NCBI GenBank assembly: GCA_013115145.1 | Contig: JAAPAO010000102.1 | Location: forward strand, 1-64,000 | Reading direction: 5' to 3' | Length of the DNA stretch: 64,000 nt | Source: Perkinsus chesapeaki ATCC PRA-425 | Lineage: Eukaryota; Protista; Perkinsozoa | Shown here: one piece after another, positions 879-19,934 of the stretch | Position numbering within the stretch: position 1 is the first letter of the stretch | How the letters are laid out: each line of letters starts with the position of its first letter | Notes under the pieces: model-generated | Database searches by the model: none | The model's input: the letters and a program-made list of their open reading frames with translations, nothing else | What the model was told of the DNA's origin: nothing | Translations under genes and position numbers: made by a program

Positions 879-2816
879 TCATGTAGGAACCATACCAATG
901 TAGGCTGCCTCGACCTCTCCTGCATGCCGCTCAGAGTCGCACAGAGGCCCCTCCACCATAAGCCGCCGCAGCGTTCGCCTCCACTTATCGAGACCGTCAA
1001 TGTCGGCGGAAAGTTTGATCGCTTTCTGGATGTACTCCGCCTCGGTTGCGGCCACAGTAGCGCTTGCGTAGTCTTCTCCAATAGCGTGCGCCAAACTAGC
1101 AGTGACTCTTTGGGAATGGCATGCGCCCTTCGATGCTAGAGTCACCACTGGGACGCCCATGTACATAGCTTCCGCGCTGGTAGTGGTGCCAGCGTACGGC
1201 CAGGGGTCCAAGCAAACGTCAATGTCACCGTACATGCCTAAATGAGTTGCAGTGGAGGGGGTCATCCCCACCAAAACGAGGCGCTCCGGCGAGACGCCCT
1301 GTGCACTGAACAACCGTTTCATCCGATCGACGGCCGCAGCGGAAGCTAATGCCTTCGACTTCAACAGCAATCGGGAATTCGGCACCTGTAGTAGGATCCC
1401 CGACCATACCCGTATAGTGTCATCAGAGAGCTTAGCGAGAGTGTTGAAACTGCCGAAAGTAACAATGCCACCGGATCGTCGCTGAGGAGCTTCTAATGAG
1501 CACTCCGGCGCATTCAGAGGAGGCGAGTAACACAGGAAGCAATGTGGCAGGCGGACAAGCTTCTCACTGTAGCCCTCGCCAGAGTCACCAATAGGATCTG
1601 TGACTCCATCTACTAGACGGTAGTCCATATTAGGCAGACCAGTAGTGTTGGGATACCCTATGTAAGTGACGGTCGTTCGGGCCGGCTTCACGGCGAAAAC
1701 TAGAAGGCGATTGTTTCCGGAGTGCCCCGCCAAGTCGACCAGAACGTCGATACGGTCGTGCCAAATCCGGCGGCACAACTGACGATCGTCCAACTCGTGG
1801 ACATCCACCCATCGCCAGTCTGGATTCTTCTCTATGCGGCCCTTCAGCCGCAGAGTAACAGCATCGTTAATGATGGAGTCGTGGTAAGCATAGACTTCGA
1901 CCTTAGATGGATCATGAGATCGAAACAAGCCTTCGACGAAGTAGCTCACAGAGTGACCGCGGAAATCTGGCGACAAGTAGCCGATTCGCAAACGCCCTTT
2001 ACATGGACGAGAACTCCGCTCTTCTCCACCGAACAAGCTGGCTTTGTCGATCTCCCTCTCGACTCGGGCCGCGACAGCGTTGCCCCATTTGCAGTGTTCC
2101 TCGGACACCCAGCGGCCACCGTCGTGCTGAGGGAGGTAGTTGAGGCTCATGAGTCGACTGTGAGGGGCGTGGCGGTGATCGGGCTCGGCTCGAATGCAAT
2201 CCTCAAAAGATGCGATCGCCGCTTGAGTTAAGCCCATATCACGGAGGAAGATCCCAGCAGTATTGAAAGCCTCAACTTCGCCCGACAGTCTACATAACTT
2301 CACCGCTTTATCCAGATTTCGCCCGGAAACGCCGTAGATGGCGCCAAGTCTATGGAGGTAATCTTTATTAGACGGGTCCGCGTCAACTGCCTTTTCCATG
2401 GCCTCCTTACAGTTAGCCCAGTCGTCGAGTAGCCTATAGCACTCCGCCTTAGCTGCCCACAGCGCTCCCTTCTCCTTGTTGCCCGCATCTCCATTCAGTT
2501 CAGCAAGCGCTATTGCAGTTCCGAGGGTAGGCAGCTCCACGGCAAAGTTCCTTTGTCGGTGAAGCATTGCCGCCTTGGCCTGGAATACTCGATAATCATC
2601 AGGCGCCAACTGGTAAGCTTCAAGCCACAATGTTTCATCTCCCTTCTTCAAAAGTGTCTCCGCCAACCCTCGTGATACATTTTCGATCGCCTTGGTGAGA
2701 CCCTCAGTGCTCTCATCAGATGCCAACGCCGCGGCTCGATGCTCCTCTCTTAGGCACTGAAGCGCTCGCTTCAATGCCTCCACCGCCTCGTCCAGGTTCC
2801 CAGGAGCCGTTGACAT
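879..2816 (-). CDS. SPY: SPINDLY-like TPR + GT41 protein O-glycosyltransferase (O-fucosyl/O-GlcNAc transferase family), intronless
   Basis: 645-aa ORF. TPR-like N-terminal half, then RLRIGYLSPDFRGHSVSYF, DVLVDLAGHSGNN, YIGYPNTTGL, TFGSFNTLAKL and DVCLDPWPYAGTTTSAEAMYMGVPVVTL, all hallmark GT41/SPY motifs. Confidence 0.9.
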   Translation of the reverse strand: MSTAPGNLDEAVEALKRALQCLREEHRAAALASDESTEGLTKAIENVSRGLAETLLKKGDETLWLEAYQLAPDDYRVFQAKAAMLHRQRNFAVELPTLGTAIALAELNGDAGNKEKGALWAAKAECYRLLDDWANCKEAMEKAVDADPSNKDYLHRLGAIYGVSGRNLDKAVKLCRLSGEVEAFNTAGIFLRDMGLTQAAIASFEDCIRAEPDHRHAPHSRLMSLNYLPQHDGGRWVSEEHCKWGNAVAARVEREIDKASLFGGEERSSRPCKGRLRIGYLSPDFRGHSVSYFVEGLFRSHDPSKVEVYAYHDSIINDAVTLRLKGRIEKNPDWRWVDVHELDDRQLCRRIWHDRIDVLVDLAGHSGNNRLLVFAVKPARTTVTYIGYPNTTGLPNMDYRLVDGVTDPIGDSGEGYSEKLVRLPHCFLCYSPPLNAPECSLEAPQRRSGGIVTFGSFNTLAKLSDDTIRVWSGILLQVPNSRLLLKSKALASAAAVDRMKRLFSAQGVSPERLVLVGMTPSTATHLGMYGDIDVCLDPWPYAGTTTSAEAMYMGVPVVTLASKGACHSQRVTASLAHAIGEDYASATVAATEAEYIQKAIKLSADIDGLDKWRRTLRRLMVEGPLCDSERHAGEVEAAYIGMVPT

Positions 2817-3440
2817 TTATTTCGAGGCCAAGGATGATCCAACTGAGACCGAGAACACGTACGTCAGTGGCAGGTAATATGCGAATACAGAGCAACACTC
2901 GCTAAGATTGGTTCTTGGTTTCGGACGATTGAAGCTAAGATGCTCAGTTAGGAACTGCAAATTGGACGTTCACTGTCCAAGCCAGAACGAACGACTTAGA
3001 AAGAAAAGTATTGGTGCATATCCCCGTGATTCCCATCTGATAAGCCACTTCCTCCCGAAAAGGTCCCAGACTTCGGTGGAAGTGTGGCCGTCAGCCTTCG
3101 TGGTACAATGCCAAAGATACAGTGACCGAGCAAGAACAGGTTTTCCTCTCAAACTCGGCACCATTAGTTGAACAGAAAAGTTTAATTCGAAGGAGAAACT
3201 CAAAGGGTATTTACATAACGGTATGGTCTGAACAACTTGACACGCAAAGCACCAGCACTAGTTGCTAACACTGTACAGCAGCCGATTCGGGAACGACTGT
3301 ATCTTGCACCACGGCCCTTCTGAGATCGGCCGTTGGTCTTTAGTCTTCTTTCCTGAGGAAATGAACACTAGGAACAAAGAGCCGACGACCTTTCAGGGTT
3401 CGCCCGTTTCGACGAATAATACAGTCACAGTGACTACGAC

Positions 3441-5041
3441 TCACTTGGACACTTTGCTCCGGGAAGATCCTTCATTCATGGCGGCGCTGCTCGGGCGCGC
3501 CAGCGTATAGTGTATGATTGCACCAGCCACAACGAACCCTATCGCGACCATCTGATACTGACTTATGTGAAAACCTTCGACGGGCTCGTATGTGCGGTAA
3601 TCTTCCACGAAGAACCTATTGTACATTTGGAGACACTCCGACACAATAAAGCAAATGTTTACCGAGTAAGGCCAAGCAGCATCAACATATCAGAGGCCTG
3701 CGTCCAAGCCGGAGCATCACGCTTGCGGCGAAGCCAGAGGACCAAAGCTACCGAGCCGGAGGTAACTATCTCATATAGCGGAGTAGGATGTACAGCTGAA
3801 GTAAAGCAAAAGTTACCATCGGAGGCAATACAATATTTGGCTTACGAATGGTGGTTGGGACTAGGCCGTTCGGGAAGCTCATCGCCCACGGCAAGTCAGT
3901 TGGATAGCCGTAGCAACCGTCGCCAGAGAGGAAGCAGCCTAGTTTACCTAACCACGGCAGGATAGCAGCTTCCTGTGTCAGCAAGTTTCGCGAGATGCAA
4001 TTTACGAGCGTCCTTTAATGCAAAAAGCAACTACAGCTAAGAATATCGCAGTTGCTACCGAACCCGACCAGATACGAAGACTTGAGTGCCGTCTAAGTTT
4101 AACAACACAGTCCATATTGACCATCTTCAATAAGGTATCGGCGATGCCGCGAAAGAAGATATGAAACCCGAATCAATCTGAGGGCGGTGAACGCACGTAG
4201 TGAGAAGGGAAATTTTGCCGCAAAAATCTTCTGAACCCCTCCTCCATAGGGTATTATTCTTACCTATCGCATGACCCAGCATCAACAGAGGCGCCAGCAT
4301 GTCCAGCATTTTACCCACAGACTCGTGACACCAATAATGAGTATAACTAATGGAAATGCACAGTCTTATCGGGAGCTCAGTTCGGGGGCATTTAAGCGCT
4401 CTATTGACTACGTTACCGAAATTAGAGAATCCGCAGTGAAAAGCGAGGGTTGAAACAGGCGAACAGCATATGGGAAATAAAGTATGTCTGTAATGTAACA
4501 GAGTGCAACTTAGCGAAGCTCGCCCAGCCAAGAATGGTCGATATACTCAGTCTGCACTTTGGAGGAAGTCGTATGTAACGTAGGGCACTTTTGCGGGCAC
4601 TTACACTGCAGTAGCAATGATGCCTCCTATAAGACCACCTTGAAAGGATAGGCCTAGAAAAAGACAAGCTGACTAGTCTCAAGCAGTTGGAAGGCACGTA
4701 CCAGTATTAAGTGCAAACAGTGCACTGTGATCCCATGTCAAAGCATAGTGTATCCTAGCTCCGACTACTCCACCAACCATGGCACACACCAGCAACACCG
4801 ATGGGTCTATCTGGAGGGAAGATGATTGACCTGCAACTAATCGGCCCTAGCCTTACTTTGAGATGCTTCCTGGCGATCTCCGCCTGCCCTAAGTAATAGG
4901 TCACCATAAACGCCAGGGCCATACAGAGGCCGTAGCTATAGACATTAACCCCTACACACACTGTACGAGACAACGTGGGAGTGGACACTTACCGCATACG
5001 GTGAATAGAACTGGTCGGACAAACTCTACAGTGATGGCCAT
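3441..5041 (-). CDS. lgt: Prolipoprotein diacylglyceryl transferase-like, copy 1 (multi-exon)
   Basis: Spliced exons read MAITVEFVRPVLFTVCG / VNVYSYGLCMALAF / AMVGGVVGARIHY / LSFQGGLIGG / LDMLAPLLMLGHAIG / KLGCFLSGDGCYGYPTDLPWAMSFPNG / VHPTPLYE / RFFVEDYR, joined by GT-AG introns. Confidence 0.85.
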
Positions 5042-5807
5042 TAAATAACAAAAAGAAAACGAAACAATAATCTACTGCACGGAACTGTTGAAGGCCAAAC
5101 AAAGAAAACTCGGCACAGCTTTAATGGTGAAAAAGTGAAAGATGCGGAAGGTATGAAGGATGACGAAGTCAGTGCACGCTGCTCTGCGCAGCGCTTAGTA
5201 TGGCACGTAGAAAGCTAGAAAAGATACTCTGGTGAGGCGAGCTCAAGCCAGCTCATTAATCGGTTTTCCTGAGGAACCAAACAACCTCTGAAATTGCTGT
5301 ACCTTATATATGGCACAATTAATAGGGTGTCAAACGTCATTAGCAGTATGCAGGCCGATTGCGGGGATTAAAGTTCTACTTTGATGCCCACGTACTATAA
5401 CGAGCTTTGGATGACATTAGTCTCTCCCTGCCTCGAGTACCAAGGAAGGGAGGCACTGAGCTACATGTAAAAGAATATTTCAACTTGCAGGCCCCAAATG
5501 AAAAACGCAGCGTTTCAAACGCCAACTCTTCGTACACCAACCGTACGTTTCATTTTCGTATTCCGAGGTTCTGGCGTATACCGGCGGGCTGAGCCCGGTC
5601 CAAGGGCTGTGTAAGATATCGGTGCACAAAATCACCACACTCGTGGTGGTGAAGGCGAGCCAATATTTTGCTGTATCTCGCCAGACCCCTAAAACGATTT
5701 GTAGGTGTCATATGAATGACCAAATACGCTTTGAGCAGCACGCACTATCAAGTCCACCCCTCACACTGTTAAATGTAAGAACGGCTTAGAAGAATTCCCT
5801 ATCGAGC

Positions 5808-7937
5808 CTACTTGGAGTTCGCCTTCTTTCTTCGTCGTTTCTCTATTTTATCGGATGTCCAACCACGTCTAGCAGCAACCTTCATGACAATGCCGGCGAC
5901 CAGGAAAGCAACAGCAACAAGTTGGTACTGGGTTATGCCAACTGTCTCCAGCCTAGAGTGAGCACGATAATTCTCGATAAAGAACCTGAAGGTGCTTATT
6001 AGGAGAAGGAATGCGCGTAGACGCCCCCTCCTTCGTGGAGTCCGTAGGGCAAATCAATGTGAGGTTCACAGCAAAGCGGCAGTCCAATTTTGCAACACTG
6101 GGCCACCAAATGTTTACCAGGTTGCCGCTTTAGGTGATCTAATTCGAGCACTGGCTTAAACGTCTATTTATTCGGAGAGTCTATCGAACTTAATGTTCAG
6201 AGCTCAGAGCTTCAACGGAAGCTCTGAGGCTTGGAAGAGCACGAAAAAAAGAGGCCAACTTGTGGTCAGAAAAGAGGAACAATGCACGACAGTATTTTCA
6301 CTAAGTACCTCACCTAGTGGAGCCCAAAAGGACCAAAAATTCCGATCCTAACGCCAAGGGAACGGACTCCACCTTCTTCCTTCTGTACCATAAGATTAAA
6401 CCACAGCTGCCAGAGGTAATCATTTCGTAAAGTGGCGTTGGATGCACCGCTGAAGGAGATGTTCACGAGTAGCTAATTTACAAGACAGACTTACGAGTGT
6501 TAGTCGGAGCGAGGCCGTTAGGAAAGCTCATAGCCCACGGTACATCAGTAGGGTAACCATAACAACCATCACCCGAAATAAAACAACCAACTTTGCCTGA
6601 TATGGAAATGAAGGATGACGACAACAGAAGGACATTACCGATTGCATGGCCGATGAGGAGGAGGGGAGCTAATGTATCCAACATTCGGCCGATTGATTCT
6701 CGACAGTAAAGCTTTGTGTATCTTGAAGACAGACCTACCATTCGACTTAATTCCACCACCAGAATCACCCCGTGGTCCCGACTATCCCTCCGACTAGTCC
6801 ACCTTGAAAGGAGTGTCCTGAATATCGATATCAAACATCTAGATTTCGGCAGGTTCTCACCTGTTGACATATCCCAGAAGGATACGTTACTTGAATCATT
6901 CCATGTGAGCATAAAATGAAGCCGTGAGCCGAGGATACCACCGATCATAGCACACACTAGAAGGACTGTCGAATCAATCTAAAAGAGTAAAAGTCTGGAA
7001 AGCAGTGCAGCTAGCTGAAAGATAGCTCAAGATAGGATCAAAGATATGCTTGATAGAATATTGCGGAATGAAAGTCGACATCGGTGCTTCCCTGCCCTAA
7101 TCGGCGTGGGCCGTGGTTAATTTTCCACCAAACCGAATAGATTGTGAGCAGCTCACCGATACGATCCAATTCAGTCATACCGATAACTGCTCAGCAAGAC
7201 ACAAGATGCTGATGAGCCAGCGTGTATCCTATCTGAGATAGAGATTCTAGACAACCACATATAGCCTGCTCGAGTGCTAAGTGGATGCGTTTCAATGAGC
7301 GCTACTACAGTCAATTATAACAGTATTCTTCCACCGTAGTACTTTGAGTCCTTTCCTTCTTAGTTCTCCATCCCCCAACAGTAATGCTGATATGAAAGAT
7401 AAGGCCATACAGAGACCATAGCCGTACACCGGACGCCCTGAGGATTATACATGTGGAAAGAAGCGCAGAAAAGCTGTAGGGTGCTTCTGGTCTACATGCA
7501 CTTTGCCATAAATAAAATTCCGATTGATCATCCTGTACGACTCGTACGCATTTTCTCAGTCTAGGCAACGCAGAGATTATAGACACCGAACAAATTATCC
7601 CACATAGCATCCGTAATCATCCAGATATCTCTCGATCCATCACTAATGACCACCATGAAATGTCAGAACTATGGGTGCAATTTCGTTGAGCAAGCTCAGC
7701 CCTTTCGTCGCAAATGTCTATGCTGAGGAGGACTAAAGTAAGATAGATTGGACCAAGTTAAGGCAACTTCTAATCAGGAGAAGTTCTCCTGATTGATCCT
7801 GAAGTGATTGGTTCTCCTGGAGAACCAATCACTGTACCCCAGCCGTAAAACATCGGTAATCACAAACCCGCTCTGCATCGCTGCTTACCAAAAACTGTAA
7901 ACATAACGGGATTCACGAAGCCCGCAACAATAGCCAT
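5808..7937 (-). CDS. lgt: Lgt-like, copy 2 (multi-exon)
   Basis: Exon 1 MAIVAGFVNPVMFTVFG (ATG at 7937); YGYGLCMALSF; GGILGSRLHF; SFQGGLVGG; GKVGCFISGDGCYGYPTDVPW; HPTPLYE; RFFIENYR ... KKANSK*. Confidence 0.85.
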
Positions 7938-8296
7938 ATGGGAGCAGAAAAAGCTGAGGCAAAGAAGAACAGACACCCCAATCAAATCTCAGTGAGAATT
8001 ATGACTTCACCCAAATAAGGAATATGTGGTGTATCCACAACGGAACCGTGTATCAGACCAACAACTGGCTGTTGCGCGACAAAGAAAGGCTAGACGTGAC
8101 ACTGCATGTAACACTGGGGGCCGAAAGCTTCTAACCGAGAAGTCATCTGTGATGCATACATCAGCTGATGCATGGCATATATTCAACTCGAGTTATACAT
8201 GCACAAAAATACGTCATTAAGACGTATTTTTGTGCATGTATAACTCGACGCATCTCTATAACTCCACTTATGACGTCGTCATAAGTGCAAGTGCAC

Positions 8297-9933
8297 TCAA
8301 AAATTAATTGCTATCTTCAGGCGTCCTTCGAGCTCACAGACTTGCGAATCAGCGACCTTTTTACACGAGCTTTGAAAGTTCAGCTTGCAGTCCCTGTAAT
8401 GCACGTGGTTTTCTGTATGTAGCCATACCTCACTCGCGTAGAGAGTTTCATTGCCAGTACTCGGATCGCTCTGAGCGTGGTAGCCCAGAAACTTGGGTAT
8501 GGCCAACTTGTTCCCGCCTCCGGCTAGAAGTGGAGAAAGAAGATATACGGGCGCACCGGACTCACCGGCGAAACTCTGATAGCCACTGGCGCGATCGCAT
8601 CAGGGACAGCGATTGCGTCAAAATTCCACACATCATCTTCATTGGCGAACATCATGTACTGCTCGGTCTTTCAACACACCGAACTTGTCAACAAGCAGAA
8701 TCGAGCCTAAACGATCGCCAACCGAGTGCAGGCAGGGATAACCGAGCTCAGCGTGATTAAACGTCAATCTGAAGGTCGTCGTAGAGAATCCGTACGGAAT
8801 TCTCTCTCAACTCAGGTCGCTACCGTTGAAGTCAATCTCAATGAAGTGCGCAGCAAACCCTTCGAGTTCGGTCGCACCACAAAGTAGCCCGAATCAGCCA
8901 GAGTCGGACTGTAGTTCAATCATTGTACTGTACAATTTGTACAACAACTGCCGCGAATTATACTGCCTTACCAATATATACGAGGCAAAACCAAGCTTCG
9001 GTACTCGTCCTTTCTGTAGTAGAGAGCCAGAACCTAGTCAAGGGCCGTGAATATCTAGATAGCACGATTCCTGTAGGCTGGTTATTAGTCAAATGTCAGG
9101 GCATTGACTACTCCAGTTGGGCTTAAATAGAGTGAATTTGTACTTGTAGTGGATGAACATCAACGAAAAGCGGCCCAGTAGACTTTTAATAGAAGCCTAG
9201 TTGCCATGACCGGAGGATGTCGACTCTAGAGTCTAGAATCTCCGAGATTCAATCTCGGCGAACGAACACAGCCACATGTAATTGGCAAGAGGCTCTATCC
9301 TATTACTATTCTTATTATACCAACATGCCATCAATCGGAGCATGAACAAATCTAATTGCTTGCGAAGTCGAGAGCATCAATATCTCCACGCACACCAGAA
9401 TCGAGCTGGTATGGAAATAATCCATTGCCGTGAGAAATGTCTTCCCCGGTGTCTTACCTCCACATGACAGCAAGTCTTGCCGGGCAAGAACGGGTAATGG
9501 TCCTCGCGTGTAGCTCGGGATAAGATGCGGCGCATTCCATGTCCCGGCGAGCGCCGGGTCTGGTCATCACCTGCGCTGGTGTCATCATGACACTGCCATG
9601 GGTACCCGTAACACCGAAGGATATATCTCACAGGAGTATAGTAACTCACCAACAACACGTTTTCTCAAGCCGCATGGAACGATCCTTCCCGAGGACCTCA
9701 CCCTCTGTTACACAGACCCAGCAGCCTGCGAGGTAAATTGCCGCTCATCCGCAGTTTCGCCCAGTACTCACACTGCCCGCTGTGATCACCATTGATAAAT
9801 AGAATCGCTCCCCGACTCGGTGGAAACCCAGAATGAATGAAGGAATGGCCACTGGATGAGCAAGTGAAGCTTGAGGAGGAACACCTTGCGAATGAACCAG
9901 CTGCCTTAATGCGATGATTGCAGAGACGAACAC
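8297..9933 (-). CDS. Probable spliced hypothetical gene or genes between lgt copies 2 and 3
   Basis: Protein-like open segments bounded by GT/AG, e.g. VFVSAIIALRQLVHSQGVPP... and GGGNKLAIPKFLGYHAQSDPSTGNETLYASEVWLHTENHVHYRDC. No family recognised and the structure is unresolved. Confidence 0.3.
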
Positions 9934-10430
9934 TCAACACTTTTGAGTACGAAGCTCGTGGTATAAACGGAGAAAGAGATAAGGAAGATTCTGCATCACT
10001 TGGTGAGCCAAGGAAGGCGCATTCGCGGGGAGTGATGATAAGCGAGGGGTTAATCGGATTTCCTGAAACATCACATGCTAACATGCAAACAAAGCCAACC
10101 ACAGTAGGCTGCCTACTGTAGGCATGAACATGACAGTAGTTAAGCAATACTCGTTGTACTGGTGACGATTATATCGTAGACAATAGAACCATTATGTCGA
10201 GGGAAAATCAGTGTTCAGAGTTTTAAAACACTACAGCATTCGCGGGTCATACCGCTTTCCGCCACCACTGGGCAGCAAGTCGGTGTCATTGTCAGTCCTA
10301 ACGTTATACCAGTCCCAACGCAAGTCGAATCACTACACACCGATGAGCTCGAGGCCCCTCCCCCAAGAAAGCAAAGTGAGCAAATCGATATGAGCTACAA
10401 CCCCCCGCAGAAAAAAATCTAATCGATAAC

Positions 10431-12336
10431 TCATGGAGCGTACTTTTCCGCGCTTTTTTCTCTGGATTTATCCGATGTCCAACCGCGGCTAATCGCGGCT
10501 TTCATTAGCAGGCCTATGAGTACAAAGGCTAAGGCGAACAGTTGGTATTGGGTTATGCCAACGTTATCCAGTGCGGAGTGACCACGGTACTTCTCGACGA
10601 AAAACCTAAGAAAACAAGCATCAACCAGATTGAGGTAATAACCATGCATAGACGTTTCATATTTGTGGATGCCGCGGAATGGTCCACAGTGGCCACTCAA
10701 TATGAAATTATACAGTATTACGTATTAGTATATAGAGTACAGCCAGTATTTCAGCCAGAACCCTGCGTGCTCTAGCTCTTCGGGCTTATTATAACTCGGG
10801 TCCATGAAGAGAGAAGCCCTGCTACTAGCAGGCTGCTAGTACCGTAGAATCCTACCTCGTGCATCCCAAGAGAACTAGCATGTCCGACATAAGCGTGAGT
10901 GGAATAGATTCCACCTTCTTTCTTCTGTACCATAAGATTAAACCACAACCGCCGGAGGTAATCATTTCATACAAAGGCGTGGGATGAACCGCTGAAGGGG
11001 GCAATATGGATGAATCAGGTGTGGAAGAATACACGACAGACTTACGAGTGTTAGTTGGAGCGAGGCCGTTAGGAAAGCTCATAGCCCACGGTACATCAGT
11101 AGGGTAACCATAACAACCATCACCCGAAATAAAACAACCAACTTTGCCTGATGTGGAAATGAAGGATGACGACAACAGAAGGACATTACCGATTGCATGG
11201 CCGATGAGGAGAAGAGGCGCTAATGTATCCATCATGCGGAAAACAGACTCTCGACAATACAGCTTTGTGTATCTGATGATGAGATACATGATGTAGATCT
11301 TGTTCACAGCATCGCAGAGAGTACGCTGTTGTGCCAATAGTTCCACCGACTAGTCCACCTTGAAAGGAGTGTCCTGAATATCGATATCAAACATCTAGAG
11401 TTTACCAGGTTTTCACCTGTTGACATATCCCAGAAGGATACGTTACTTGAATCATTCCATGTGAGCATAAAATGAAGCCGTGAGCCGAGGATACCACCGA
11501 TCATAGCACACATTAGAAGGACCGCCGAGTCGATCTAGAAATCAAAAGACCTGCGCTTCATTGTGAATACAGCCCTTTCCAAACATACGAAAACCTAGGT
11601 ACACCTTCCTATTTTCTAAAGTAGCACACAATTTAGCGGAGGCTAGCTGCCCCTGCGTCCTTGCTATAGACAGCATCGCTGCATTGCCAGACCGTGATAG
11701 CAAATATAGTAGTGTATACCGCTGTCCCCAGTGGGGACTCCCCACTAGAATATAATATTTTTTAATCATCTCACATCAAATTTTCAAGTGGGCGAGCTGC
11801 GAACGTCCAACAGGGACTCCGAGTCCGGAGTGGCTACAGCAAGTGGGCTACATTTGTAATAGCGGCCATGCATTAGTCACACCTACTAAAGACGTGCAAC
11901 CACGGCAGCTTTGAGTGATGGACAAATAGGGAGGAATAGACATCGCCAATATGTAAAGGACATTGAATGAAGATAGGGATCGTCTATTTCACCTTCAATC
12001 CTTTCCTTCTCAGTTCCCCATCCCCCAAAAGCAAAGCTGACATGAACGATAAGGCCATACAGAGACCATAGCCGTACACAGGACGTCCTGAGGATTATAC
12101 ACATGAGATGAAGCGATCTCATTCGGCGTTAGTGCGCCACAGCTAGCTTCCTCTAGCAAAAAAAACTGCAGGATTTCCGACATCCAGTGGAAATAGTTCA
12201 AGAACAGTGGACGATGTTTCATTTACCGTCAACTACACTAACGCTATAAAGCACCAGTCGATCAAGCTTCACTTCACACTTTCTTACCAAAGACTGTGAA
12301 CAGAACGGGTCTTACGAATTCCACAACAACGGCCAT
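10431..12336 (-). CDS. lgt: Lgt-like, copy 3 (multi-exon)
   Basis: Exon 1 MAVVVEFVRPVLFTVFG (ATG at 12336); the same motif series as the other copies; last exon RFFVEKYR ... AEKYAP*. Confidence 0.85.
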
Positions 12337-13162
12337 ATGGAGGGTGGCGAAGCCGAAGGACAAAGAATGGCCGCGCTGACTGAAGGAATCCAACAATTGA
12401 AAATGTTGACTGTTTAACTCAAACCTGGATCAGTCATAACGACACCAAGCGAGGTAACACCACTTTAGTTGTCGATGAAGTTGAAGGTTTCGATAGCAGA
12501 ATAGCACTCGATAAGAATCAACCACGAGATTCCGAAAAGACCGGTGAGCGACTATAGGGGGGCCGTAGGGGGGGAATACCAGCAGAAGCAGGAACATAAC
12601 GGTGTACACCGGAAAACGTGCCCTGGAGGTCGACAAGTCTGATCGCATTCGACGAACTGATGCGTCTCGGCTATAAGAGTAGGTGATCAATCTTTTGTGT
12701 GTAATACCGCTAACTTCTGTCCCCACTGAGGTAGACTGTACCCTAATTAGGGCAGTTGAAGTAGCCGTCAAACCGGTAATAGGCTGACAATACGGAGCTA
12801 TCAGAACATGTAGGAAAAAAACTGACCAGACGAACCAAAGTGAGGAGCACAGAGAATCATGCTATTAAGAAAAAGGGTGGCGCAAACTCTCTCTCAGGAC
12901 ACTTTCAACACAATCCAACAATAGCCAACACTAACGATCGTTGTATAAAGCAGTAAGTGCTGCACTTTTCCCATTCCGTAATAGCACCTGCATCGGGCCG
13001 TCCCGATGATTTGACGTTAATTGGTCTTTCTGAGGAGGAGAAGGACAGCGATCTCAGCAGTCACTCCTCCCAGAAGCCCCGCAGAGGCAAGGCGTGATGT
13101 GAAGTAAATGCGAGAACACACATAGAAAGAAACAGAGTCGTCGAAAAGCCTATCTCAGAAGC

Positions 13163-15678
13163 CTACTTAGACCGAGCCTTCTTTTTCTTGTCATCTTGCT
13201 CTGTCGTCTGCTTTGATGATATCCAACCACGCTTGATTGCTAGCTTCAATGCTAGACCAACGAGTATAAACGCCACGGCAAATAGTTGGAACTGGGTGAT
13301 ATAAATGTTATCTAACCTCTCGTGGCCTCGATACCTCTCTACGAAAAATCTGACAAAGAACCACGGTGATGTCTGCTCACGCATCCTATCAAATTGCGGA
13401 GAACTTCCTTCCGGAGCTAGATTTACTTAGAGCAATTTGGAGACACCGCAAAGAACGCGACGGTCACCTGCAGTAGATACTATCTCCCGAGCAAAGCACA
13501 CGAGCGCTTCGCAGGAGTGCTAGCACTCGAATGACATTATGCTGCAGCGTTATTTGGTTATATATGTACGCCACGCACTTCTCCTTTACTCTCGCCTCGT
13601 GCGTTCTGTACGGTTTGCTAGTAGTCGTATGTTGACTGCCCGCCACCAACAAGAAAAGGAAAACCAAATGTGTCAAAGGTTTAAAATTCACACATCGCAT
13701 TATATTTGCACCGTTACCGGCCCACTTGTGGTCCAAGGTGTCCACAACCGCGGAAAATATCTCGAATAGGCAATTTCGTCGACATCCAAAGAGCCAAACT
13801 CGAGTCGTTCGCCCCTTCCACGAGAATCAAGAAGCTAACAACTAAGTGTCCCATACACACAGCTGAGGCATAGGCTACTTCTAGAAAAGTTACAAAGTAC
13901 AGCAGTACGGCTATGAACGACGCTGAATTATTTATCCGTTGTGGACGCGTGAGAAATCTTACCTTGTAGAACCCAAAAGGATGAAAAAATCTGACACTAG
14001 TGCCAGCGGAACCGATTCCACTTTCTTCCTTCTGTACCATAAAATCAAGCCACAGCTGCCAGAGGTAATCATTTCGTACAACGGCGCTGGATGTACCGCT
14101 GAAGGAGATGTTCATGAGCAACTCATTTACGAAACAGACTTACGAGTGTTAGTTGGAGCGAGGCCGTTAGGAAAGCTCATAGCCCACGGTACATCAGTAG
14201 GGTAACCATAACAACCATCACCCGAAATAAAACAACCAACTTTGCCTGATATGGAAATGAAGGATGACGACAACAGAAGGACATTACCGATTGCATGGCC
14301 GATGAGGAGGAGGGGAGCTAATGTATCCAACATTCGGCCGATTGATTCCCGACAGCAAAGCTTTGTGTATCTTGAAGACAGACCTACCATTCGACTTAAT
14401 TCCACCACCAGAATCACCCCGTGGTCCCGACTATCCCTCCGACTAGTCCACCTTGAAAGGAGTGTCCTGAATATCGATATCAAACATCTAGATTTCAGCA
14501 GGTTCTCACCTGTTGACATATCCCAGAAGGATACGTTACTTGAATCATTCCATGTAAGCATAAAATGAAAGCGTGAGCCGAGGATACCACCGATCATAGC
14601 ACACATTAGAAGGACTGTCGAATCAATCTAAAAGAGTAAAAGTCGGCGATCCATGAATTCGTCTATTCTACCTTCAATCCTTTCCTCTTTAGTTCCCCAT
14701 CCCCCAACAGCAATGCTGACATGAACGACAAGGCCATACAGAGACCATAGCCGTACACAGGACGTCCTGAGGATTATACATGTGGAAAAGATGGTAGTTA
14801 CGTGGAACGAGAGCACGAAGATATACTTTCCTATTAGTTCAATAGGCAGCTAACAAAATCTGGGACGTCCCCCAAAAACGAGTTTTTGAATGAAGGTGGA
14901 ATGACGTAGGAGCTAATACCGGCTGAATGAAACAGCCTGTCTCACACTTGTCGATCGACCCTTGCGCAAGTTTCGATGGCACCGAAGCGTTTTGCCGTAA
15001 ACAGAAAATACTGATCGGTATCCCTGCCAATAGAACATGATGTGAGTGGGAATGGGAGGTAGTTCAGAAATGGCATTCGGCATTTTCGCCAAGTTTCAGA
15101 TGTAAACGTTATGATAAACTTTATATAACGTTAAGCATATGAAGCAGCATTTTCTTGAACTTGAGACTTCTCATCCTCGCAGTTACACTGCTCCACCCAT
15201 TCTTATCATAAATGGTGTTATGCGCATAACTCGAGTTCAGAGGCAAATCAAGTCCTGATTTTCGAGTATTATACTATCCTTAGCCCTGCAGATGTTATAG
15301 CAATGGTATTTAATGTCGATTCCAGCCCAACCCTGAGAACTGAACACAGCGCGCCCAAACATCTCCACAACTTCTTATCATAGAATCTACAGCATATATT
15401 CCGAATCCCGGTGTTGATTCTCAAGTCACGTGGTCAGTTTGTTCTATACATTCCAGTAGTGCGTGTTAGCAATTGCATTAGATATATAAAAACGTAAATA
15501 CTCATCACTGAGTGGAAAATCGAAATAATATTTCACTTCATTGCGCCGGGCTGTACAGCCACGAGCATTAAGCCATTCCAACACTAACGAACCGCGGCAA
15601 CGCCTGCTAGTTGGTCCCTGTCAGCTCACCGAATATAGTAAAGAGAACAGGCCTTGCAAAGTCCACAACAATAGCCAT
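13163..15678 (-). CDS. lgt: Lgt-like, copy 4 (multi-exon)
   Basis: Exon 1 MAIVVDFARPVLFTIFG (ATG at 15678); core nearly identical to copy 2; last exon RFFVERYR ... KKKKARSK*. Confidence 0.85.
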
Positions 15679-15799
15679 GGTGGAGCCCAGTAAAGCTGTG
15701 CAAGGGTAGGATATACTACCACCGAATTCAATCATTCTAACTTCAACTCAATTCAAGAAGATAGGATGACATCCAACGCATGGTAATCATACAAAAAAC

Positions 15800-16780
15800 C
15801 GCGCGCCACAAATCTCATTCAGGAAGACATGCAGCACTGCAAAGGAGCGAACCAATATCCAGCCTCAAGTCGATGCCTTCTGGGCGTCGCCGGCTCACTC
15901 ATCTGCAAAAAGATAATCTGATTCAGCCAACTTTCTCCTGTTTGTACCAGGCCATCCATATCTCCAGCAGATGCCATCGGCTGAACCGGCTTTCTATACC
16001 CTCTCGTTGGCGACGGTCCGGCTATGCTCGCCTGGCAAAACCTTCTAACCCACGGGATCTCACAGCTATTCTATTCCCACTACAAAACATTATCAACTCT
16101 CAAAACTTCGAACGTTAGAATTTGAAGAATAGTAAATTCACGAAACGGGCCCATCCTAACCAGCACCACCCAGCCCGATTCCTTGCTCACCTGCGGAGCC
16201 TTCAGCTCCCATTCATTAGTACTTCCGTATCCGTCGCGTTCAAGGGCCTGAGAGTGGCGAGTTACAGGAAGCCGCCACCCGAACTGCAACCCACATGATT
16301 GAGCTCGTCCAACTTGAAGTCATCAAGGGTCCCCTCCGGAACAAGCAACTGCCCCTACAGGCGATCAACTAAATGTCACAGTATACCACCAACCTCACTT
16401 GTGTAGCGCGAAACTCAGCCAGAAGATCTTTCTCCTCGACCATCATGGTCTGAGCAGTAAAGTTAACCTGTGTATCAAACTCCGGTCAACTCCCACCTTA
16501 GGCGTAGGCAGCCCAAGAGCCTCAAACACCGGCCCCGCTTCCTTTGAATAAACGACTGGCTCTTTCGCAGAGTTCTTCCGCCACAGACCGCCCCGTACAG
16601 TCGGCAGGGCCAGGCAGCTGCCAAAAGATGGGAAGGATGTCAGCAAAATGCAGCTACCGATGGCACGTCCTCAGTAGAGCTTCGTCCGAGTCTAAGCTCG
16701 CCAGACTGTCGGACCTGAAAATTTTCAAAGTGTTATCGCGCTCGTGTGTATCATGTTTCCATAAAAATCGCCAAAATCTC
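15800..16780 (-). CDS. Intron-rich hypothetical protein
   Basis: Short in-frame exons with GT-AG boundaries: CLALPTVRGGLWRKNSAKEPVVYSKEAGPVFEALGLPTPK / VNFTAQTMMVEEKDLLAEFRATQ / GQLLVPEGTLDDFKLDELNH / ALERDGYGSTNEWELKAPQ. The ends are uncertain. Confidence 0.45.
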
Positions 16781-16957
16781 CACACACTAGAGGCTGCTCT
16801 GATTTAAAAGCCGAGACGCTCTCCACGCCCCTGCAGCGGGAGGCGAAAAGCCTCACATCTACAGCCTCCAAGAGCTATTCGCAAAGCGCTACCAAAAGAT
16901 GTATGTTCGAAGATGCAGATATCGGTATCGATTATGGACGAAGCCTTCGGTTTATGT

Positions 16958-19777
16958 TTACTGTGACGTTAGGTGGGTTATCGGGTAGAATTGTTGAATG
17001 TCTTCTTTGTTACCACCATATCTCTGCTCTAGCTGATCAGGACAGAAATACCTGGCAAAGTGATGATGCAAGTAGGAGAGCCCTGGACGAGGAGGATATA
17101 AAAAAACCAACCGTGGCTCAGGGCTTGACAACTTTGATGGCTGGAAAACGTGGAAACAAGCTCTTTTTCGACGAACAAAGAAGAATGGCTGGAGCGAGTT
17201 CAGTGGTAGAATGGGAGCACTAGACCCGTAATCGAAGAACAGACCGCCCAGCACGCCTTTAAAATGAATGACAAGAATAATGACAAAGAATATCAACAAA
17301 ACAAGAAGCACAAAGAAGGCCTCGTGCGGAAAGTACGAAAGAAAAAGCCACGGTAACAGAACGATGATGTACATATCTGATTGATAAATGAGACCAACCT
17401 ACTTCGCCAGATCTTCGTGTAAATCCGTGACCACATGGTTCTTCTGCAACTGCCTCTCAGTCATCAGTTTTCTCGCTACGTTCCAAACTACATTCTTCAA
17501 GAAGGATGGTAAATTAACAAGATAAATGGCAGCCATTCGACCCATATAATGATGGGCTAGAACCTCACAGAAACTGCGTAACCATACCACCCAGTGTTGG
17601 AATATATGTATGTACTCGCCTGCATCAGTTGGCGAATAAAGAGAAAGGCTTGAGGGAATTTAACAACATTCTTTTCGACCGTTGCAACTACCAGAATATA
17701 TTACCCATAACGGAGCCACACATTACTTCTTACAATGTGCTATACTATAGCTATACATAGGTTATATATCTTATATAGCCTATATTACTAAATGGGAAGA
17801 GAGTATATTGCCAAGGGAGTTTTACAGAAATCAATCGACAAAGATGGCGAGTATCCCAATACTGATCCCGAGAATTGTCAGACTATGATTTATTGTATCT
17901 GCCAGCTTGCTCTTTTCTACCATTTTCTTCTCACTACTACTGTATACACCGAGGATTGTTCACAGCTGCTTACTTTATAGAGGGCGTAAGCCGTTGAGAA
18001 TGGCACGTCAAATCCAAGGCCACTAAAGTCTGCAATTACTACTATGGATTCTACTTTACTCGGCAGCAACATGTACCTAACCAGTGCATGGCATTTGGGG
18101 ACAGAAATTGTGTCCAAGTTACCGAGTGATGAACTCGAGGATGAAAACGCTTGTACGAATAGCTCTCTCTTTGGAGACTCGGGCTTTCACTAAAAGGCTC
18201 GGCCGCACCACTAGGCAGGGTCGCAATTGCTTATCGCGGCCACACACATACACAAATCCCTAAACACAAAAGGGCTGGGCCGAGAATCGAACTCGGGACC
18301 TCTCGCACCCAAAGCGAGAATCATACCACTAGACCACACAGCCGATACGAGAACCGTTATATAGAAAGCTACTCCTTATTATTGTCAAACTAACGTTTAA
18401 CCAATCCTCACCGCATTCAACTCTCGTAACAAATCCGTATCTCCCACTGGCTGTTTGAAATACTCCAATCCTACCAATGACACCACTTCTATCACTACTA
18501 GCTCAGTCTCTCACTCCATTCTTGAGTTTCAATCAGTTCCCTCGCCGCCCGATCAACATTAAAGCGGGCATGATACAAGTACCTTTCACAGATGCCGATC
18601 ATGACGGATAAGTCTCATACTAGCAATCGAATTAATCGGGATTCTGCTCAAAAGAGCTGCATTGAACATCCTATATACCCGCTACAGTTGAGATGAGGTT
18701 CGTCCAACCATATCGCCCGGACGTTCTCAATACTATCATCTCAGCCATGCGTCTCACATAGTGGAGCAAGCCCCCGACCTCCGGTCGATTAACTAAGTTT
18801 ATCATTGGATGCTATCACTGCAGGCTGAAAAGCTCTTACCATCACCGCCAGTGGTGGTAACAGATTTTCCAGTGGTCCATCGGTGGGGTTTGATGGGGCC
18901 AAAGCGGGCCAAAATTATTACAATAATAATATATAATATATTTTAATATACCTATAATATTACCCCGCAAAGAAATAGTTGAGATTCACAACATATACGT
19001 CACACCTTTCCGCACGTTTTTACCAGAGTTCCCGTTCGCCCAATAGTTCAGTACCCAACTCACAGCTATCATTATGACTAATACGCATTATACTCATAAC
19101 CTCACGAATCGGACGGCCTACCCAAAGTACTACCGTAAAATCCTGGGCTCCAACTGTCTGGCCAGCGTTACTCCTCGTGCAGCCAGCACTCTGTACACTT
19201 CTTCGATGGCTTCCAGTTCATGGGGCATGAGATCTACCTGATACCCATCATGGAGGGGTGAGGATCCAATTATGGAATCTATGGTCATCGAAAGAGAAAC
19301 AAATCCATTTACGATGATAATAGTTTCATTTATATCCACTGAAGCTCAATTGCTGGACATCCAAACCAGCTGAGGGATTTCCGGAGTAACTTGTCCCCTT
19401 CAGTTGGCTGCTTACCACCATCAGTTGACAACTTTCTTGCTTTAAGTGCCAACTTGGCACTTGCAGCAAGTGAAAGCAAGTGTTTCACACTTTCCTAGAA
19501 TAACTCGAATTCTGCCCTCATCAGTTATGCGTAGTACAGACTACCAGCCATGATGGATCCAAGCACTTGCAGGGTTTAGAGTTTGTATGGTTCAGCTATA
19601 CAAACCCGAAACCCCACATTGCTGCCATTCGCCACGCACTACTACATTGAGGAATATTCTCCTTTCATAATCCCCATTAGTAAACCTCGAGAACATGTCC
19701 GCATCTTCCAGCTCTCGCAGGAGCACTTCCGGTGGCAGTGTGTAGTCCCCTATGGCGGAGTCCACCGCAATGCTCAT
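16958..19777 (-). CDS. CRAL-TRIO / Sec14-like lipid-binding protein
   Basis: Phase-compatible exons give ERRIFLN|VDLMPHELEA..PRILR|YLYHARFNVDRAARELIETQEWR..|GFVYVCGRDKQLRPCLVVRP..|VESIVVIADFSGLG..|HHYMGRMAAIYLVNLP..|YFCPDQLEQRYGG. Confidence 0.85.
18272..18343 (-). tRNA. trnP: tRNA-Pro(TGG), inside a CRAL-TRIO intron
   Basis: GGCTGTGTGGTCTAGTGGTATGATTCTCGCTTTGGGTGCGAGAGGTCCCGAGTTCGATTCTCGGCCCAGCCC folds into a cloverleaf with one 6:67 mismatch and is followed by TTTT. Confidence 0.92.
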
Positions 19778-19934
19778 ACAGCAAACACAATCACTGTCCC
19801 CCCAACCTCATTATTAAGAACTCCAGCCATTAACACTTATACGGGAAACAAACTCGATTGCGGTATTTTATGGTAACCAACTATTATGAATGAATAAAGC
19901 ACAGAGAATAGAAACAGCTTCGCACGGCCAGCGC

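What the first reader, a model, noticed from the sequence alone, without database searches (positions are those of the whole stretch)
3441..15678. Four-copy tandem array of intron-containing bacterial Lgt genes in a eukaryote
Seen: four same-strand paralogs, each with the same 8-exon layout and intact Lgt motifs (YG, GGxxGxR, SFxGG, GCxxSGDGCYG..PW, HPTPLYE, RFFxExYR). Established: Lgt transfers diacylglyceryl from phosphatidylglycerol to the lipobox Cys of bacterial prolipoproteins, a pathway not typical of eukaryotic cells. The proteins start directly with the bacterial-like N-terminal arm (MAIVVDFARPVLF), with no obvious bipartite plastid-targeting leader. Inference: an old horizontal or endosymbiotic acquisition that gained introns and then expanded, pointing to an undescribed eukaryotic protein-lipidation or lipid-remodelling system.
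Basis: partly seen in the sequence, partly recalled or inferred. Interest (0 to 1): 0.82.

Follow-up and report, generated by a model that had tools for sequence, protein, structure and literature searches.

The report
Bacterial-type Lgt genes in Perkinsus
The oyster-parasite relative Perkinsus chesapeaki carries four intact, intron-containing copies of a bacterial lipoprotein-lipidating enzyme (Lgt); at least two are transcribed, and they belong to a wider, unstudied eukaryotic branch of that family found across dinoflagellates and their kin.

Summary
Four same-strand (minus) genes at 3441-15678 each have 8 exons, GT-AG introns, an intact ORF of 264-272 aa and a full-length Pfam LGT domain.

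The window is Perkinsus chesapeake contig JAAPAO010000102.1. Copies A and B are already annotated (FOL47_000228 and FOL47_000229). Copies C and D are buried in a fused 1023-aa gene model.

RNA contigs show six of copy D's seven introns spliced exactly as modelled. They also show a spliced-leader 5' end that fixes the first AUG at MAIVVDF, so there is no targeting leader. Copy B is also transcribed.

The genes are not peculiar to this genome. P. marinus has 2 copies and P. olseni 3, in the same CRAL_TRIO-LgtB-LgtA order. A well-supported clade (100/99) also holds Amoebophrya, Symbiodinium, Polarella, Crypthecodinium and many environmental eukaryote sequences. It is nested among bacterial Lgt of Poribacteria/Acidobacteriota type.

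The eukaryotic clade has K in place of the essential R143 and Q/M in place of H103. It gains H139, and 80% of members end in a di-lysine ER-retrieval motif; the four window proteins do not.

Most likely this is an ER-membrane Lgt-type transferase from an old bacterial transfer. Its substrate is untested.

The scan had already noted copy D on an overlapping window (s1-215545).

The parts
3441..5041 (-). Copy A (type-A paralogue, 264 aa; public FOL47_000228). Exons: 5041-4993, 4951-4857, 4810-4702, 4653-4605, 4346-4264, 3947-3846, 3795-3663, 3615-3441.
   Evidence: Hand model, all introns GT-AG. Identical to P0006. Pfam LGT E 4e-46. Orthologous to P. marinus P0007 and P. olseni P0005 in the tree.
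5808..7937 (-). Copy B (type-B paralogue, 269 aa; public FOL47_000229). Exons: 7937-7889, 7437-7343, 6978-6861, 6817-6769, 6721-6639, 6596-6495, 6449-6314, 5985-5808.
   Evidence: Model, identical to P0001. Pfam LGT E 7e-43. AlphaFold2 mean pLDDT 91; the only significant PDB match is E. coli Lgt 5azb. B-specific transcript pieces appear in the RNA runs: the loose end at 12085 equals B exon 1, and X4 record 14 carries B's three differences in exon 3.
10431..12336 (-). Copy C (type-B paralogue, 268 aa; not annotated as a gene of its own). Exons: 12336-12288, 12087-11993, 11534-11417, 11373-11325, 11272-11190, 11147-11046, 10991-10856, 10605-10431.
   Evidence: Model. Intact ORF; dN/dS 0.19 against B and 0.14 against D. 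In the public annotation it is part of a fused 1023-aa CRAL_TRIO+LGT model. No copy-specific RNA evidence was obtained.
13163..15678 (-). Copy D (type-B paralogue, 272 aa; not annotated as a gene of its own). Exons: 15678-15630, 14766-14672, 14627-14510, 14466-14418, 14370-14288, 14245-14144, 14098-13963, 13349-13163.
   Evidence: Model. RNA contigs show joints that skip 863, 44, 43, 47, 42 and 613 nt at exactly these boundaries, all CT..AC on the + strand. A D-specific exon 7-8 contig with no mismatches comes from a run labelled as the same organism.
15715..15717 (-). Spliced-leader trans-splice acceptor of copy D. The AG lies at 15717-15716 and the mRNA body starts at 15715. The 5'UTR runs 15715-15679 (37 nt).
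   Evidence: Contigs from three RNA runs stop matching the genome at 15717. They continue with letters whose reverse complement is CCGTAGCCATTTTGGCTCA, the dinoflagellate/perkinsid spliced leader (SL sequences in PMC3101222). This removes the upstream in-frame ATG at 15735-15733.
14144..14627 (-). Gene-conversion tract shared by non-adjacent copies D (14144-14627) and B (6495-6978), covering exons 3-6 and introns 3-5.
   Evidence: B and D are 97-100% identical in exons 3-6 and 98-100% in introns 3-5. Exons 1, 7 and 8 are only 67-82% identical. blastn gives 6309-6995 against 13958-14644 at 94.3%.
14144..14245 (-). Exon 6 of copy D, encoding the Lgt signature motif in its eukaryotic form (GK-VGCFISGDGCYG...PWAMSFPNG). 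The homologous exons are 3846-3947, 6495-6596 and 11046-11147.
   Evidence: Aligned to E. coli G142-G154. K replaces R143, C replaces N146 and D replaces E151.

Best explanation
These are four nuclear paralogues of an Lgt-family integral membrane transferase in Perkinsus chesapeaki. Copies B and D are shown to be transcribed and spliced, and B, C and D evolve under purifying selection.

History (shown): the gene entered an ancestor of Perkinsozoa and dinoflagellates, possibly of a wider group, from a bacterium carrying the 'GRxGCFxxGDGCYG / PWAMSFPNG' Lgt subtype. In the Perkinsus lineage it gained seven spliceosomal introns. It then duplicated into types A and B before the Perkinsus species split. 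Type B amplified in tandem (D, C, B), with later gene conversion between B and D.

Mechanism (inferred): the protein inserts into the ER membrane through its own first helix, with no leader. It adopts the bacterial topology, with the C-terminus in the cytosol and the catalytic cavity towards the lumen. Most members of the eukaryotic clade are held in the ER by a C-terminal di-lysine signal. The enzyme transfers the diacylglyceryl group of a glycerophospholipid to a thiol, most likely a cysteine of a secretory or membrane protein. It does so with a remodelled catalytic centre: K143 and H139 in place of R143 and H103.
For: Gene structure, intact ORFs and identity to the public proteins.

Family and fold:
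- Full-length Pfam LGT.
- The profile hits E. coli Lgt 5azb at E 9e-37.
- AlphaFold2 model with mean pLDDT 91 and seven long helices; its only PDB match is 5azb, TM 0.77.

Expression:
- Spliced and SL-capped transcripts of D, and B-specific transcript pieces.
- A P. marinus EST (PMC2868825).
- dN/dS of 0.14-0.21 among B, C and D.

Genuine eukaryotic residence:
- Eukaryotic neighbours, and the CRAL_TRIO-LgtB-LgtA order conserved in three Perkinsus species.
- Homologues in Amoebophrya, Symbiodinium, Polarella, Crypthecodinium and MMETSP/EukProt transcriptomes, and on a 23-kb eukaryotic contig.
- The eukaryotic clade is one side of a branch at 100/99.

Reaction centre: the donor-lipid cavity residues Y26, E202, R239, E243 and R246 are kept, as is D at position 151.

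Localisation: di-lysine C-termini in 103 of 128 eukaryote-type sequences against 13 of 184 bacterial-type, p = 6e-43. In E. coli Lgt the active site faces the periplasm (PMC4728403).
Against: - R143K and H103Q each abolish activity in E. coli Lgt (PMC4728403), and both changes are fixed in the eukaryotic clade.
- The TIGR00544 equivalog cut-off of 118.9 bits is not reached (84-100 bits).
- The four window proteins themselves lack a canonical KKXX or KXKXX C-terminus.
- Phosphatidylglycerol is scarce in ER membranes (general knowledge).
- No lipobox substrates and no Lsp or Lnt partners were looked for or found.
- 'Eukaryotic' is inferred rather than recorded for the unnamed environmental members.
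Confidence: 0.6

Rival explanations
1. Neofunctionalised Lgt fold. The enzyme keeps the lipid-binding cavity but no longer lipidates lipobox proteins. It might move diacylglyceryl to a non-protein acceptor, use a donor other than phosphatidylglycerol, or act in membrane-lipid remodelling.
For: - R143 becomes K and H103 becomes Q/M across the whole eukaryotic clade, with a new near-invariant H139.
- R143K and H103Q are inactive in E. coli.
- The scores fall below the NCBIfam equivalog cut-off.
- A Sec14/CRAL_TRIO lipid-transfer gene is the conserved upstream neighbour in three Perkinsus species.
- No Lsp or Lnt is known from these organisms: no paper was found.
Against: - The bacterial sister subfamily also lacks H103 (it has Y/F) and N146 (it has C), yet is named Lgt in its genomes, so these positions are not universally required.
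- The GGL part of the proposed peptide-binding motif is kept in Perkinsus.
- K can still bind a phosphate.
- No positive evidence points to any alternative acceptor.
Confidence: 0.27
2. Organelle-targeted Lgt inherited from the plastid or mitochondrial endosymbiont, working in an organelle membrane where phosphatidylglycerol is available.
For: Phosphatidylglycerol is concentrated in mitochondria and plastids (general knowledge). Perkinsus retains a relic plastid. Amoebophrya proteins have N-terminal extensions of about 135 residues.
Against: - The SL acceptor leaves MAIVVDF as the first AUG, so there is no presequence.
- Most clade members start directly with the Lgt arm and end in a di-lysine ER signal.
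- The best bacterial relatives are Poribacteria, Acidobacteriota, Calditrichota and KSB1, not cyanobacteria or alphaproteobacteria. The latter two groups were not placed explicitly in the tree.
Confidence: 0.08
3. Artefact: bacterial contamination of the assembly, or dead gene copies.
For: The bacterial family assignment. Copies C and D are not annotated as separate genes.
Against: - 28 GT-AG introns, spliced and SL-bearing transcripts, and eukaryotic flanking genes.
- The same locus is present in three Perkinsus genomes.
- All ORFs are intact and dN/dS is about 0.14-0.21.
Confidence: 0.02

Closest known systems
E. coli phosphatidylglycerol:prolipoprotein diacylglyceryl transferase Lgt (PDB 5azb/5azc)
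   Same: Same Pfam family over its whole length. Same seven-helix fold (TM 0.77). Same N-terminal arm, and the cavity residues Y26, E202, H196-P197, Y201, R239, E243 and R246 are kept.
   Different: About 25% identity. R143 is K, H103 is Q, N146 is C, E151 is D, G154 is Y and Y235 is L, and the L6-7 loop around W256/Y259 is missing. Encoded by an intron-containing nuclear gene with an SL-trans-spliced mRNA. No thyA linkage.
Bacterial 'GRxGCFxxGDGCYG / PWAMSFPNG' Lgt subfamily (Poribacteria, Acidobacteriota such as Terracidiphilus and Angelobacter, Calditrichota, KSB1, Eisenbacteria)
   Same: Closest prokaryotic relatives, at 33-40% identity. They share C146, D151, the second Cys, PWAMSFPNG and VHPTPLYE.
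   Different: The bacteria keep R143 and have Y/F at position 103 and Y/Q at 139. They start with MYPExFxIGP and rarely end in di-lysine. No single phylum is resolved as the donor.
Annotated eukaryotic homologues: P. marinus 'prolipoprotein diacylglyceryl transferase, putative' (P0002, P0007), P. olseni (P0003, P0005), Symbiodinium 'lgt' (P0293, P0294), Amoebophrya (P0127, P0334), Crypthecodinium (P0301)
   Same: Same clade (100/99). Same K143/H139/C146 signature. The Perkinsus orthologues share the type-A and type-B split and the CRAL_TRIO-B-A gene order.
   Different: P. chesapeaki has four copies, against two in P. marinus and three in P. olseni. Its proteins lack the canonical di-lysine end that the P. 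marinus and P. olseni orthologues carry. Intron positions are not shared with Amoebophrya.
Archaeal lipoprotein biogenesis proteins AliA/AliB (PMC12462473)
   Same: Another case of lipobox-type protein lipidation outside bacteria. It is an analogue in what it does, not in sequence.
   Different: That paper states that archaea have no Lgt homologue. The Perkinsus proteins are true Lgt homologues. No comparison was run here.

Membership tests
Lgt family (Pfam PF01790, fold of PDB 5azb) | Full-length match to the LGT profile above the curated cut-off | tested here: met
   P0001 (copy B) scores 147 bits and P0006 (copy A) 158 bits against a cut-off of 24.9, covering profile positions 1-238 of 240. 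The read-through ORFs of C and D also pass.
Lgt family (Pfam PF01790, fold of PDB 5azb) | Seven-transmembrane-helix Lgt fold | tested here: met
   AlphaFold2 model of copy B with mean pLDDT 91.3 and seven long helices. Foldseek returns 5azb as the only hit with E below 0.001 (3e-11, TM 0.77).
Canonical Lgt (equivalog, EC 2.5.1.145) | Score above the NCBIfam TIGR00544 equivalog cut-off | tested here: not met
   84-100 bits against a cut-off of 118.9. The best model, NF000778, scores 110-118 against a cut-off of 334.
Canonical Lgt (equivalog, EC 2.5.1.145) | Arg at E. coli position 143, called 'absolutely conserved'; R143A/E/K are inactive | tested here: not met
   Lys in all four window proteins and in 41 of 42 eukaryote-type rows. 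Arg in 38 of 38 bacterial kin. Mutant data are from PMC4728403.
Canonical Lgt (equivalog, EC 2.5.1.145) | His103 of the HGGL motif; H103A/N/Q/R/Y are inactive | tested here: not met
   Gln in all four copies (SFQGGL). The eukaryotic clade has Q, M or I and the bacterial kin have Y or F.
Canonical Lgt (equivalog, EC 2.5.1.145) | Signature motif G142-G154 (GRLGNFINGELWG) | tested here: inconclusive
   G142, G145 and an acidic residue at 151 (D) are kept. N146 is C, N149 is S and G154 is Y in an ungapped alignment, although a Gly follows one residue later.
Canonical Lgt (equivalog, EC 2.5.1.145) | Y26, E202, R239, E243 and R246 of the donor-lipid cavity | tested here: met
   All five are conserved in A-D. 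R239, E243, R246 and E202 are present in 42 of 42 eukaryote-type rows.
Canonical Lgt (equivalog, EC 2.5.1.145) | Transfers diacylglyceryl from phosphatidylglycerol to the lipobox Cys of a prolipoprotein | not testable with these tools
   Needs a complementation test, an enzyme assay or lipoproteomics.
Bacterial lipoprotein pathway (Lgt-Lsp-Lnt) | Partner enzymes Lsp (signal peptidase II) and Lnt, and lipobox substrates, in the same genome | not tested
   No tool here searches the Perkinsus proteome. The scan's own notes hold nothing, and no paper was found.
Eukaryotic (dinozoan-type) Lgt-like clade, defined here | Placement inside the monophyletic eukaryote-type clade | tested here: met
   winA-D fall in the Perkinsus subclade (100/100) of a 42-row clade supported at 100/99.
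Eukaryotic (dinozoan-type) Lgt-like clade, defined here | GH-AIG-K signature: His139 together with Lys143 | tested here: met
   All four copies read GHAIGK. H139 is present in 122 of 129 K-type sequences, against 7 of 195 R-type.
Eukaryotic (dinozoan-type) Lgt-like clade, defined here | C-terminal di-lysine (KKXX or KXKXX) ER-retrieval motif | tested here: not met
   The clade has it in 103 of 128 sequences, but the window proteins end in ..KKANSK..KKARSK..RSKVSK and ..EKYAP. The P. marinus and P. olseni orthologues do carry it.

The most novel reading that the evidence does not exclude
Perkinsids, syndinians and dinoflagellates run a bacterial-style S-diacylglyceryl lipidation of secretory proteins in the ER. 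The enzyme would be an Lgt descendant with a rebuilt catalytic centre (K143/H139). If so, these eukaryotes make bacterial-type lipoproteins, a class of molecule that animal innate immunity recognises, at the surface of a mollusc parasite and of coral symbionts.
Probability: 0.33. Interest if true: 0.85.

Novelty: new variant of a known kind. Interest (0 to 1): 0.62.

Why it matters
Lgt-dependent lipoprotein formation is treated as a bacterial hallmark and an antibiotic target, and archaea are reported to lack Lgt altogether. This analysis shows a conserved, expressed and selected Lgt lineage in a large eukaryotic group. It has its own signature (K143, H139, an ER-retrieval tail) and no functional study that I could find.

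If it still lipidates proteins, it would be a fourth kind of eukaryotic protein lipid anchor. It would also be relevant to host recognition of Perkinsus parasites and Symbiodinium symbionts. If it does not, it is a natural experiment in which residues thought indispensable for Lgt catalysis were replaced.

The four-copy array itself is an ordinary tandem expansion with gene conversion.

Tried and rejected
- **Single-exon comparison with PDB:** too weak to use. A read-through ORF matched 5azb only at E 0.37. It was replaced by a profile search.
- **Scan notes on Lsp or Lnt in this genome:** nothing found.
- **Literature on eukaryotic Lgt, or on Lsp in dinoflagellates or Perkinsus:** only a one-line EST mention turned up.
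- **ESM Atlas look-up of P0122:** it returned only bacterial LGT clusters and gave no taxonomic help.
- **Naming the compact-genome eukaryote that carries P0122, through its TRAPP neighbour:** only unnamed environmental relatives were found.
- **Shared intron positions between Perkinsus and Amoebophrya:** none is identical. My exon mapping of the last Amoebophrya intron did not finish.
- **tRNA or Rfam elements in introns and spacers, prompted by this genome's tRNA-derived introns elsewhere:** none found in 2500-16500.
- **Copy-specific RNA for copy C:** the reads that land on C are explained by B or D sequence identical to C over those stretches.
- **Upstream in-frame ATG of copy D (15735) as a possible leader:** rejected, because the SL acceptor lies downstream of it.
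- **Not done:**
  - The spliced proteins C and D have no reference id, so they were analysed only in scripts and were not sent to the protein databases.

Full report
**What is in the sequence.**

The region 3441-15678 holds four Lgt-like genes, all on the minus strand. I built the models by hand from the reverse-strand sequence.
- Each gene has eight exons and seven GT..AG introns, at identical positions and phases.
- Exon lengths are 49, 95, 118, 49, 83, 102, 136 and 175-187 nt. Copy A has in-frame deletions of 9 and 3 nt.
- The ORFs are intact: 264 aa (A), 269 aa (B), 268 aa (C) and 272 aa (D).
- Most introns are 41-54 nt, and a few are 200-863 nt.
- B, C and D are 81-83% identical as proteins. 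A is about 56% identical to each of them.
- tblastn finds no further copies or fragments anywhere in the 64-kb window.

**Where the window comes from and what is already annotated.**

A database search with a read-through ORF returned Perkinsus proteins first. My models of copies B and A are identical to P. chesapeaki FOL47_000229 and FOL47_000228. The encoding contig is GCA_013115145.1 JAAPAO010000102.1, and window coordinates equal record coordinates.

In that annotation, copies C and D are not separate genes. They are merged with the upstream CRAL_TRIO (Sec14-like) gene into one 1023-residue model.

**Expression.**

I laid four small RNA runs on 10400-15750.
- Joints skip 863, 44, 43, 47, 42 and 613 nt at exactly my boundaries for introns 1, 2, 3, 4, 5 and 7 of copy D. 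All are CT..AC on the + strand.
- A D-specific exon 7-8 contig without mismatches comes from a run labelled as the same organism as the DNA runs.
- In three runs the contigs leave the genome at 15717. They continue with the reverse complement of CCGTAGCCATTTTGGCTCA, the dinoflagellate/perkinsid spliced leader (compare PMC3101222).
- These libraries are described as RT-PCR, so the leader letters may partly be primer. The junction position still stands.
- The acceptor AG is at 15717-15716. The upstream in-frame ATG at 15735 is therefore absent from the mRNA, and the first AUG is 15678 (MAIVVDF).
- This shows that D has its own mRNA, which argues against the fused public model. It also shows that there is no N-terminal targeting extension.
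- Pieces carrying B-specific sequence show that B is transcribed and spliced too.
- A P. marinus EST matching this enzyme was listed in passing in 2010 (PMC2868825).

dN/dS among B, C and D is 0.14-0.21.

**Family assignment.**
- Copies A and B match Pfam LGT over the whole profile, at E 4e-46 and 7e-43.
- A profile of the family hits E. coli Lgt (5azb) at E 9e-37 along its full length.
- An AlphaFold2 model of copy B has mean pLDDT 91.3 and seven long helices. 5azb is its only significant PDB match (E 3e-11, TM 0.77).
- The NCBIfam equivalog cut-off for lgt is not reached: 84-100 bits against 118.9.

**A eukaryotic clade, not a Perkinsus oddity.**

An exhaustive search and a profile search found many relatives with three shared traits. 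They have the same N-terminal arm (M-IV--FV-PVLF), 'GHAIGK-GCF-SGDGCYG', and Lys-rich C-termini.

Named members are:
- Amoebophrya sp. A120 and A25;
- Symbiodinium sp. CCMP2592 and S. necroappetens, both annotated 'lgt';
- Polarella glacialis;
- Crypthecodinium cohnii;
- several MMETSP and EukProt transcriptomes, and one Tara metatranscriptome record.

One environmental member (P0122) is an intronless gene on 17-23-kb contigs. Its neighbours are TRAPP, LSM, VPS13, kinase and ankyrin genes, so the contig comes from a compact eukaryotic genome of unknown identity.

I built a maximum-likelihood tree of 81 sequences with E. coli as outgroup.
- All 42 eukaryote-type rows fall on one side of a branch, with support 100/99.
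- Perkinsus forms a 100/100 subclade. It is split into type A (copy A with P. olseni and P. marinus orthologues) and type B.
- B, C and D form a P. chesapeaki-specific triplet.
- The bootstrap had not fully settled, and the 'eukaryote' label of the unnamed rows is my inference.

The nearest bacterial genomes are Poribacteria, Acidobacteriota (Terracidiphilus, Angelobacter), Calditrichota, KSB1 and Eisenbacteria, at 33-40% identity. No phylum is resolved as sister. Cyanobacterial and alphaproteobacterial Lgt were not put in the tree.

**History of the locus.**

| Species | Gene order |
|---|---|
| P. marinus | CRAL_TRIO, LgtB, LgtA |
| P. olseni | CRAL_TRIO, B, B, A (partly fused in annotation) |
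| P. chesapeaki | CRAL_TRIO, D, C, B, A |

All seven intron positions are shared by types A and B, so they predate that duplication. The Amoebophrya introns lie at other positions: the equivalents of residues 46, 107, 198 and 216, against 16, 48, 87, 104, 131, 165 and 211 in Perkinsus. The environmental gene P0122 has none. Introns were therefore gained within lineages.

B and D are 97-100% identical across exons 3-6 and 98-100% across introns 3-5, but only 67-82% in exons 1, 7 and 8. That is a gene-conversion tract between non-adjacent copies.

**Catalytic residues.**

Positions follow E. coli numbering.

| Position | E. coli | Eukaryotic clade | Bacterial kin |
|---|---|---|---|
| Y26, E202, H196, Y201, R239, E243, R246 | as listed | kept | kept |
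| 151 | E | D | D |
| 146 | N | C | C |
| 143 | R | K (41 of 42) | R (38 of 38) |
| 103 | H | Q, M or I | Y or F |
| 139 | L | H (122 of 129) | Y or Q |

In E. coli, R143A/E/K and H103A/N/Q/R/Y are all inactive, and R143 is described as binding the donor phosphatidylglycerol (PMC4728403). A review proposes H103 as the proton acceptor (PMC8048626).

The eukaryotic enzymes therefore fail two defining tests of canonical Lgt while keeping most of the donor-lipid cavity. One idea is that His139, one helical turn before Lys143, takes over the role of His103. That is my speculation.

**Location.**

Among sequences with a complete C-terminus, 103 of 128 eukaryote-type proteins end in KKXX or KXKXX, against 13 of 184 bacterial-type (Fisher p = 6e-43). 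Both P. marinus orthologues (KKTN, KKAD) and both P. olseni orthologues (KKKG, KKDD) carry the motif.

In E. coli Lgt the cavity opens to the periplasm (PMC4728403). Its C-terminus is cytoplasmic, which I take from established knowledge of Lgt topology. A cytosolic di-lysine tail therefore fits an ER membrane protein whose cavity faces the lumen.

The four proteins of this window end in KKANSK, KKARSK, RSKVSK and EKYAP. None of these is a canonical motif, and I cannot explain the exception.

**Verdict.**

The finding is real, and its gene models are correct.

It needs correcting on three others:
- There is no sign of an endosymbiotic source.
- The gene family is widespread in dinozoans and already carries automatic Lgt annotations.
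- The catalytic centre is altered, so classical Lgt chemistry is a hypothesis and not a given.

My best reading is an ER-resident Lgt-type transferase, with confidence 0.6 for the whole statement. Identity and history are far more certain than function. The main rival is a changed acceptor or donor (0.27).

Noticed in passing
window about 16100-19780, minus strand: A CRAL_TRIO (Sec14-like lipid-transfer) gene lies directly upstream of copy D. The same neighbour precedes the Lgt genes in P. marinus and P. olseni. Public annotations of P. chesapeaki and P. olseni fuse it with Lgt copies (1023, 692, 720 and 855 aa models). The spliced-leader site of copy D argues against that fusion.
   Followed up: partly
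window 12449-12724: An unspliced transcribed piece (contigs of 275 and 151 nt in two RNA runs) lies between the stop of copy D and the ATG of copy C. It has no Rfam or tRNA match. It could be a long 3'UTR, a leader of copy C, or DNA carry-over.
   Followed up: partly
proteins P0301, P0328, P0340, P0351, P0134, P0135 and many others: One dinoflagellate subclade of the eukaryotic Lgt-like family has a conserved N-terminal extension beginning MC[ILF][LF]C followed by an alanine run, ahead of the Lgt arm. It might be an acylation or targeting signal.
   Followed up: no
L083-L085 (ENA metagenome scaffolds, 17-23 kb): A gene-dense, apparently intron-poor eukaryotic genome of unknown identity carries an intronless Lgt-like gene next to a TRAPP subunit gene. 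The TRAPP-Lgt adjacency recurs on other environmental contigs, judged from matching contig lengths.
   Followed up: partly
window 8188-8248 and 7803-7833: Two near-perfect palindromes (61 nt at 95% and 31 nt at 97%), one in the B-C spacer and one in intron 1 of copy B (blastn self-comparison).
   Followed up: no
window 879-2816, minus strand: Downstream of copy A, the public annotation has a 645-aa Glyco_transf_41 (O-GlcNAc-transferase-like, TPR) gene.
   Followed up: no
ESM Atlas clusters: Acidobacteriota have LGT domains fused to an O-methyltransferase domain (Methyltransf_3/24), about 480 aa, in clusters of 55 and 290 members. This is a bacterial Lgt-family fusion of unknown role.
   Followed up: no
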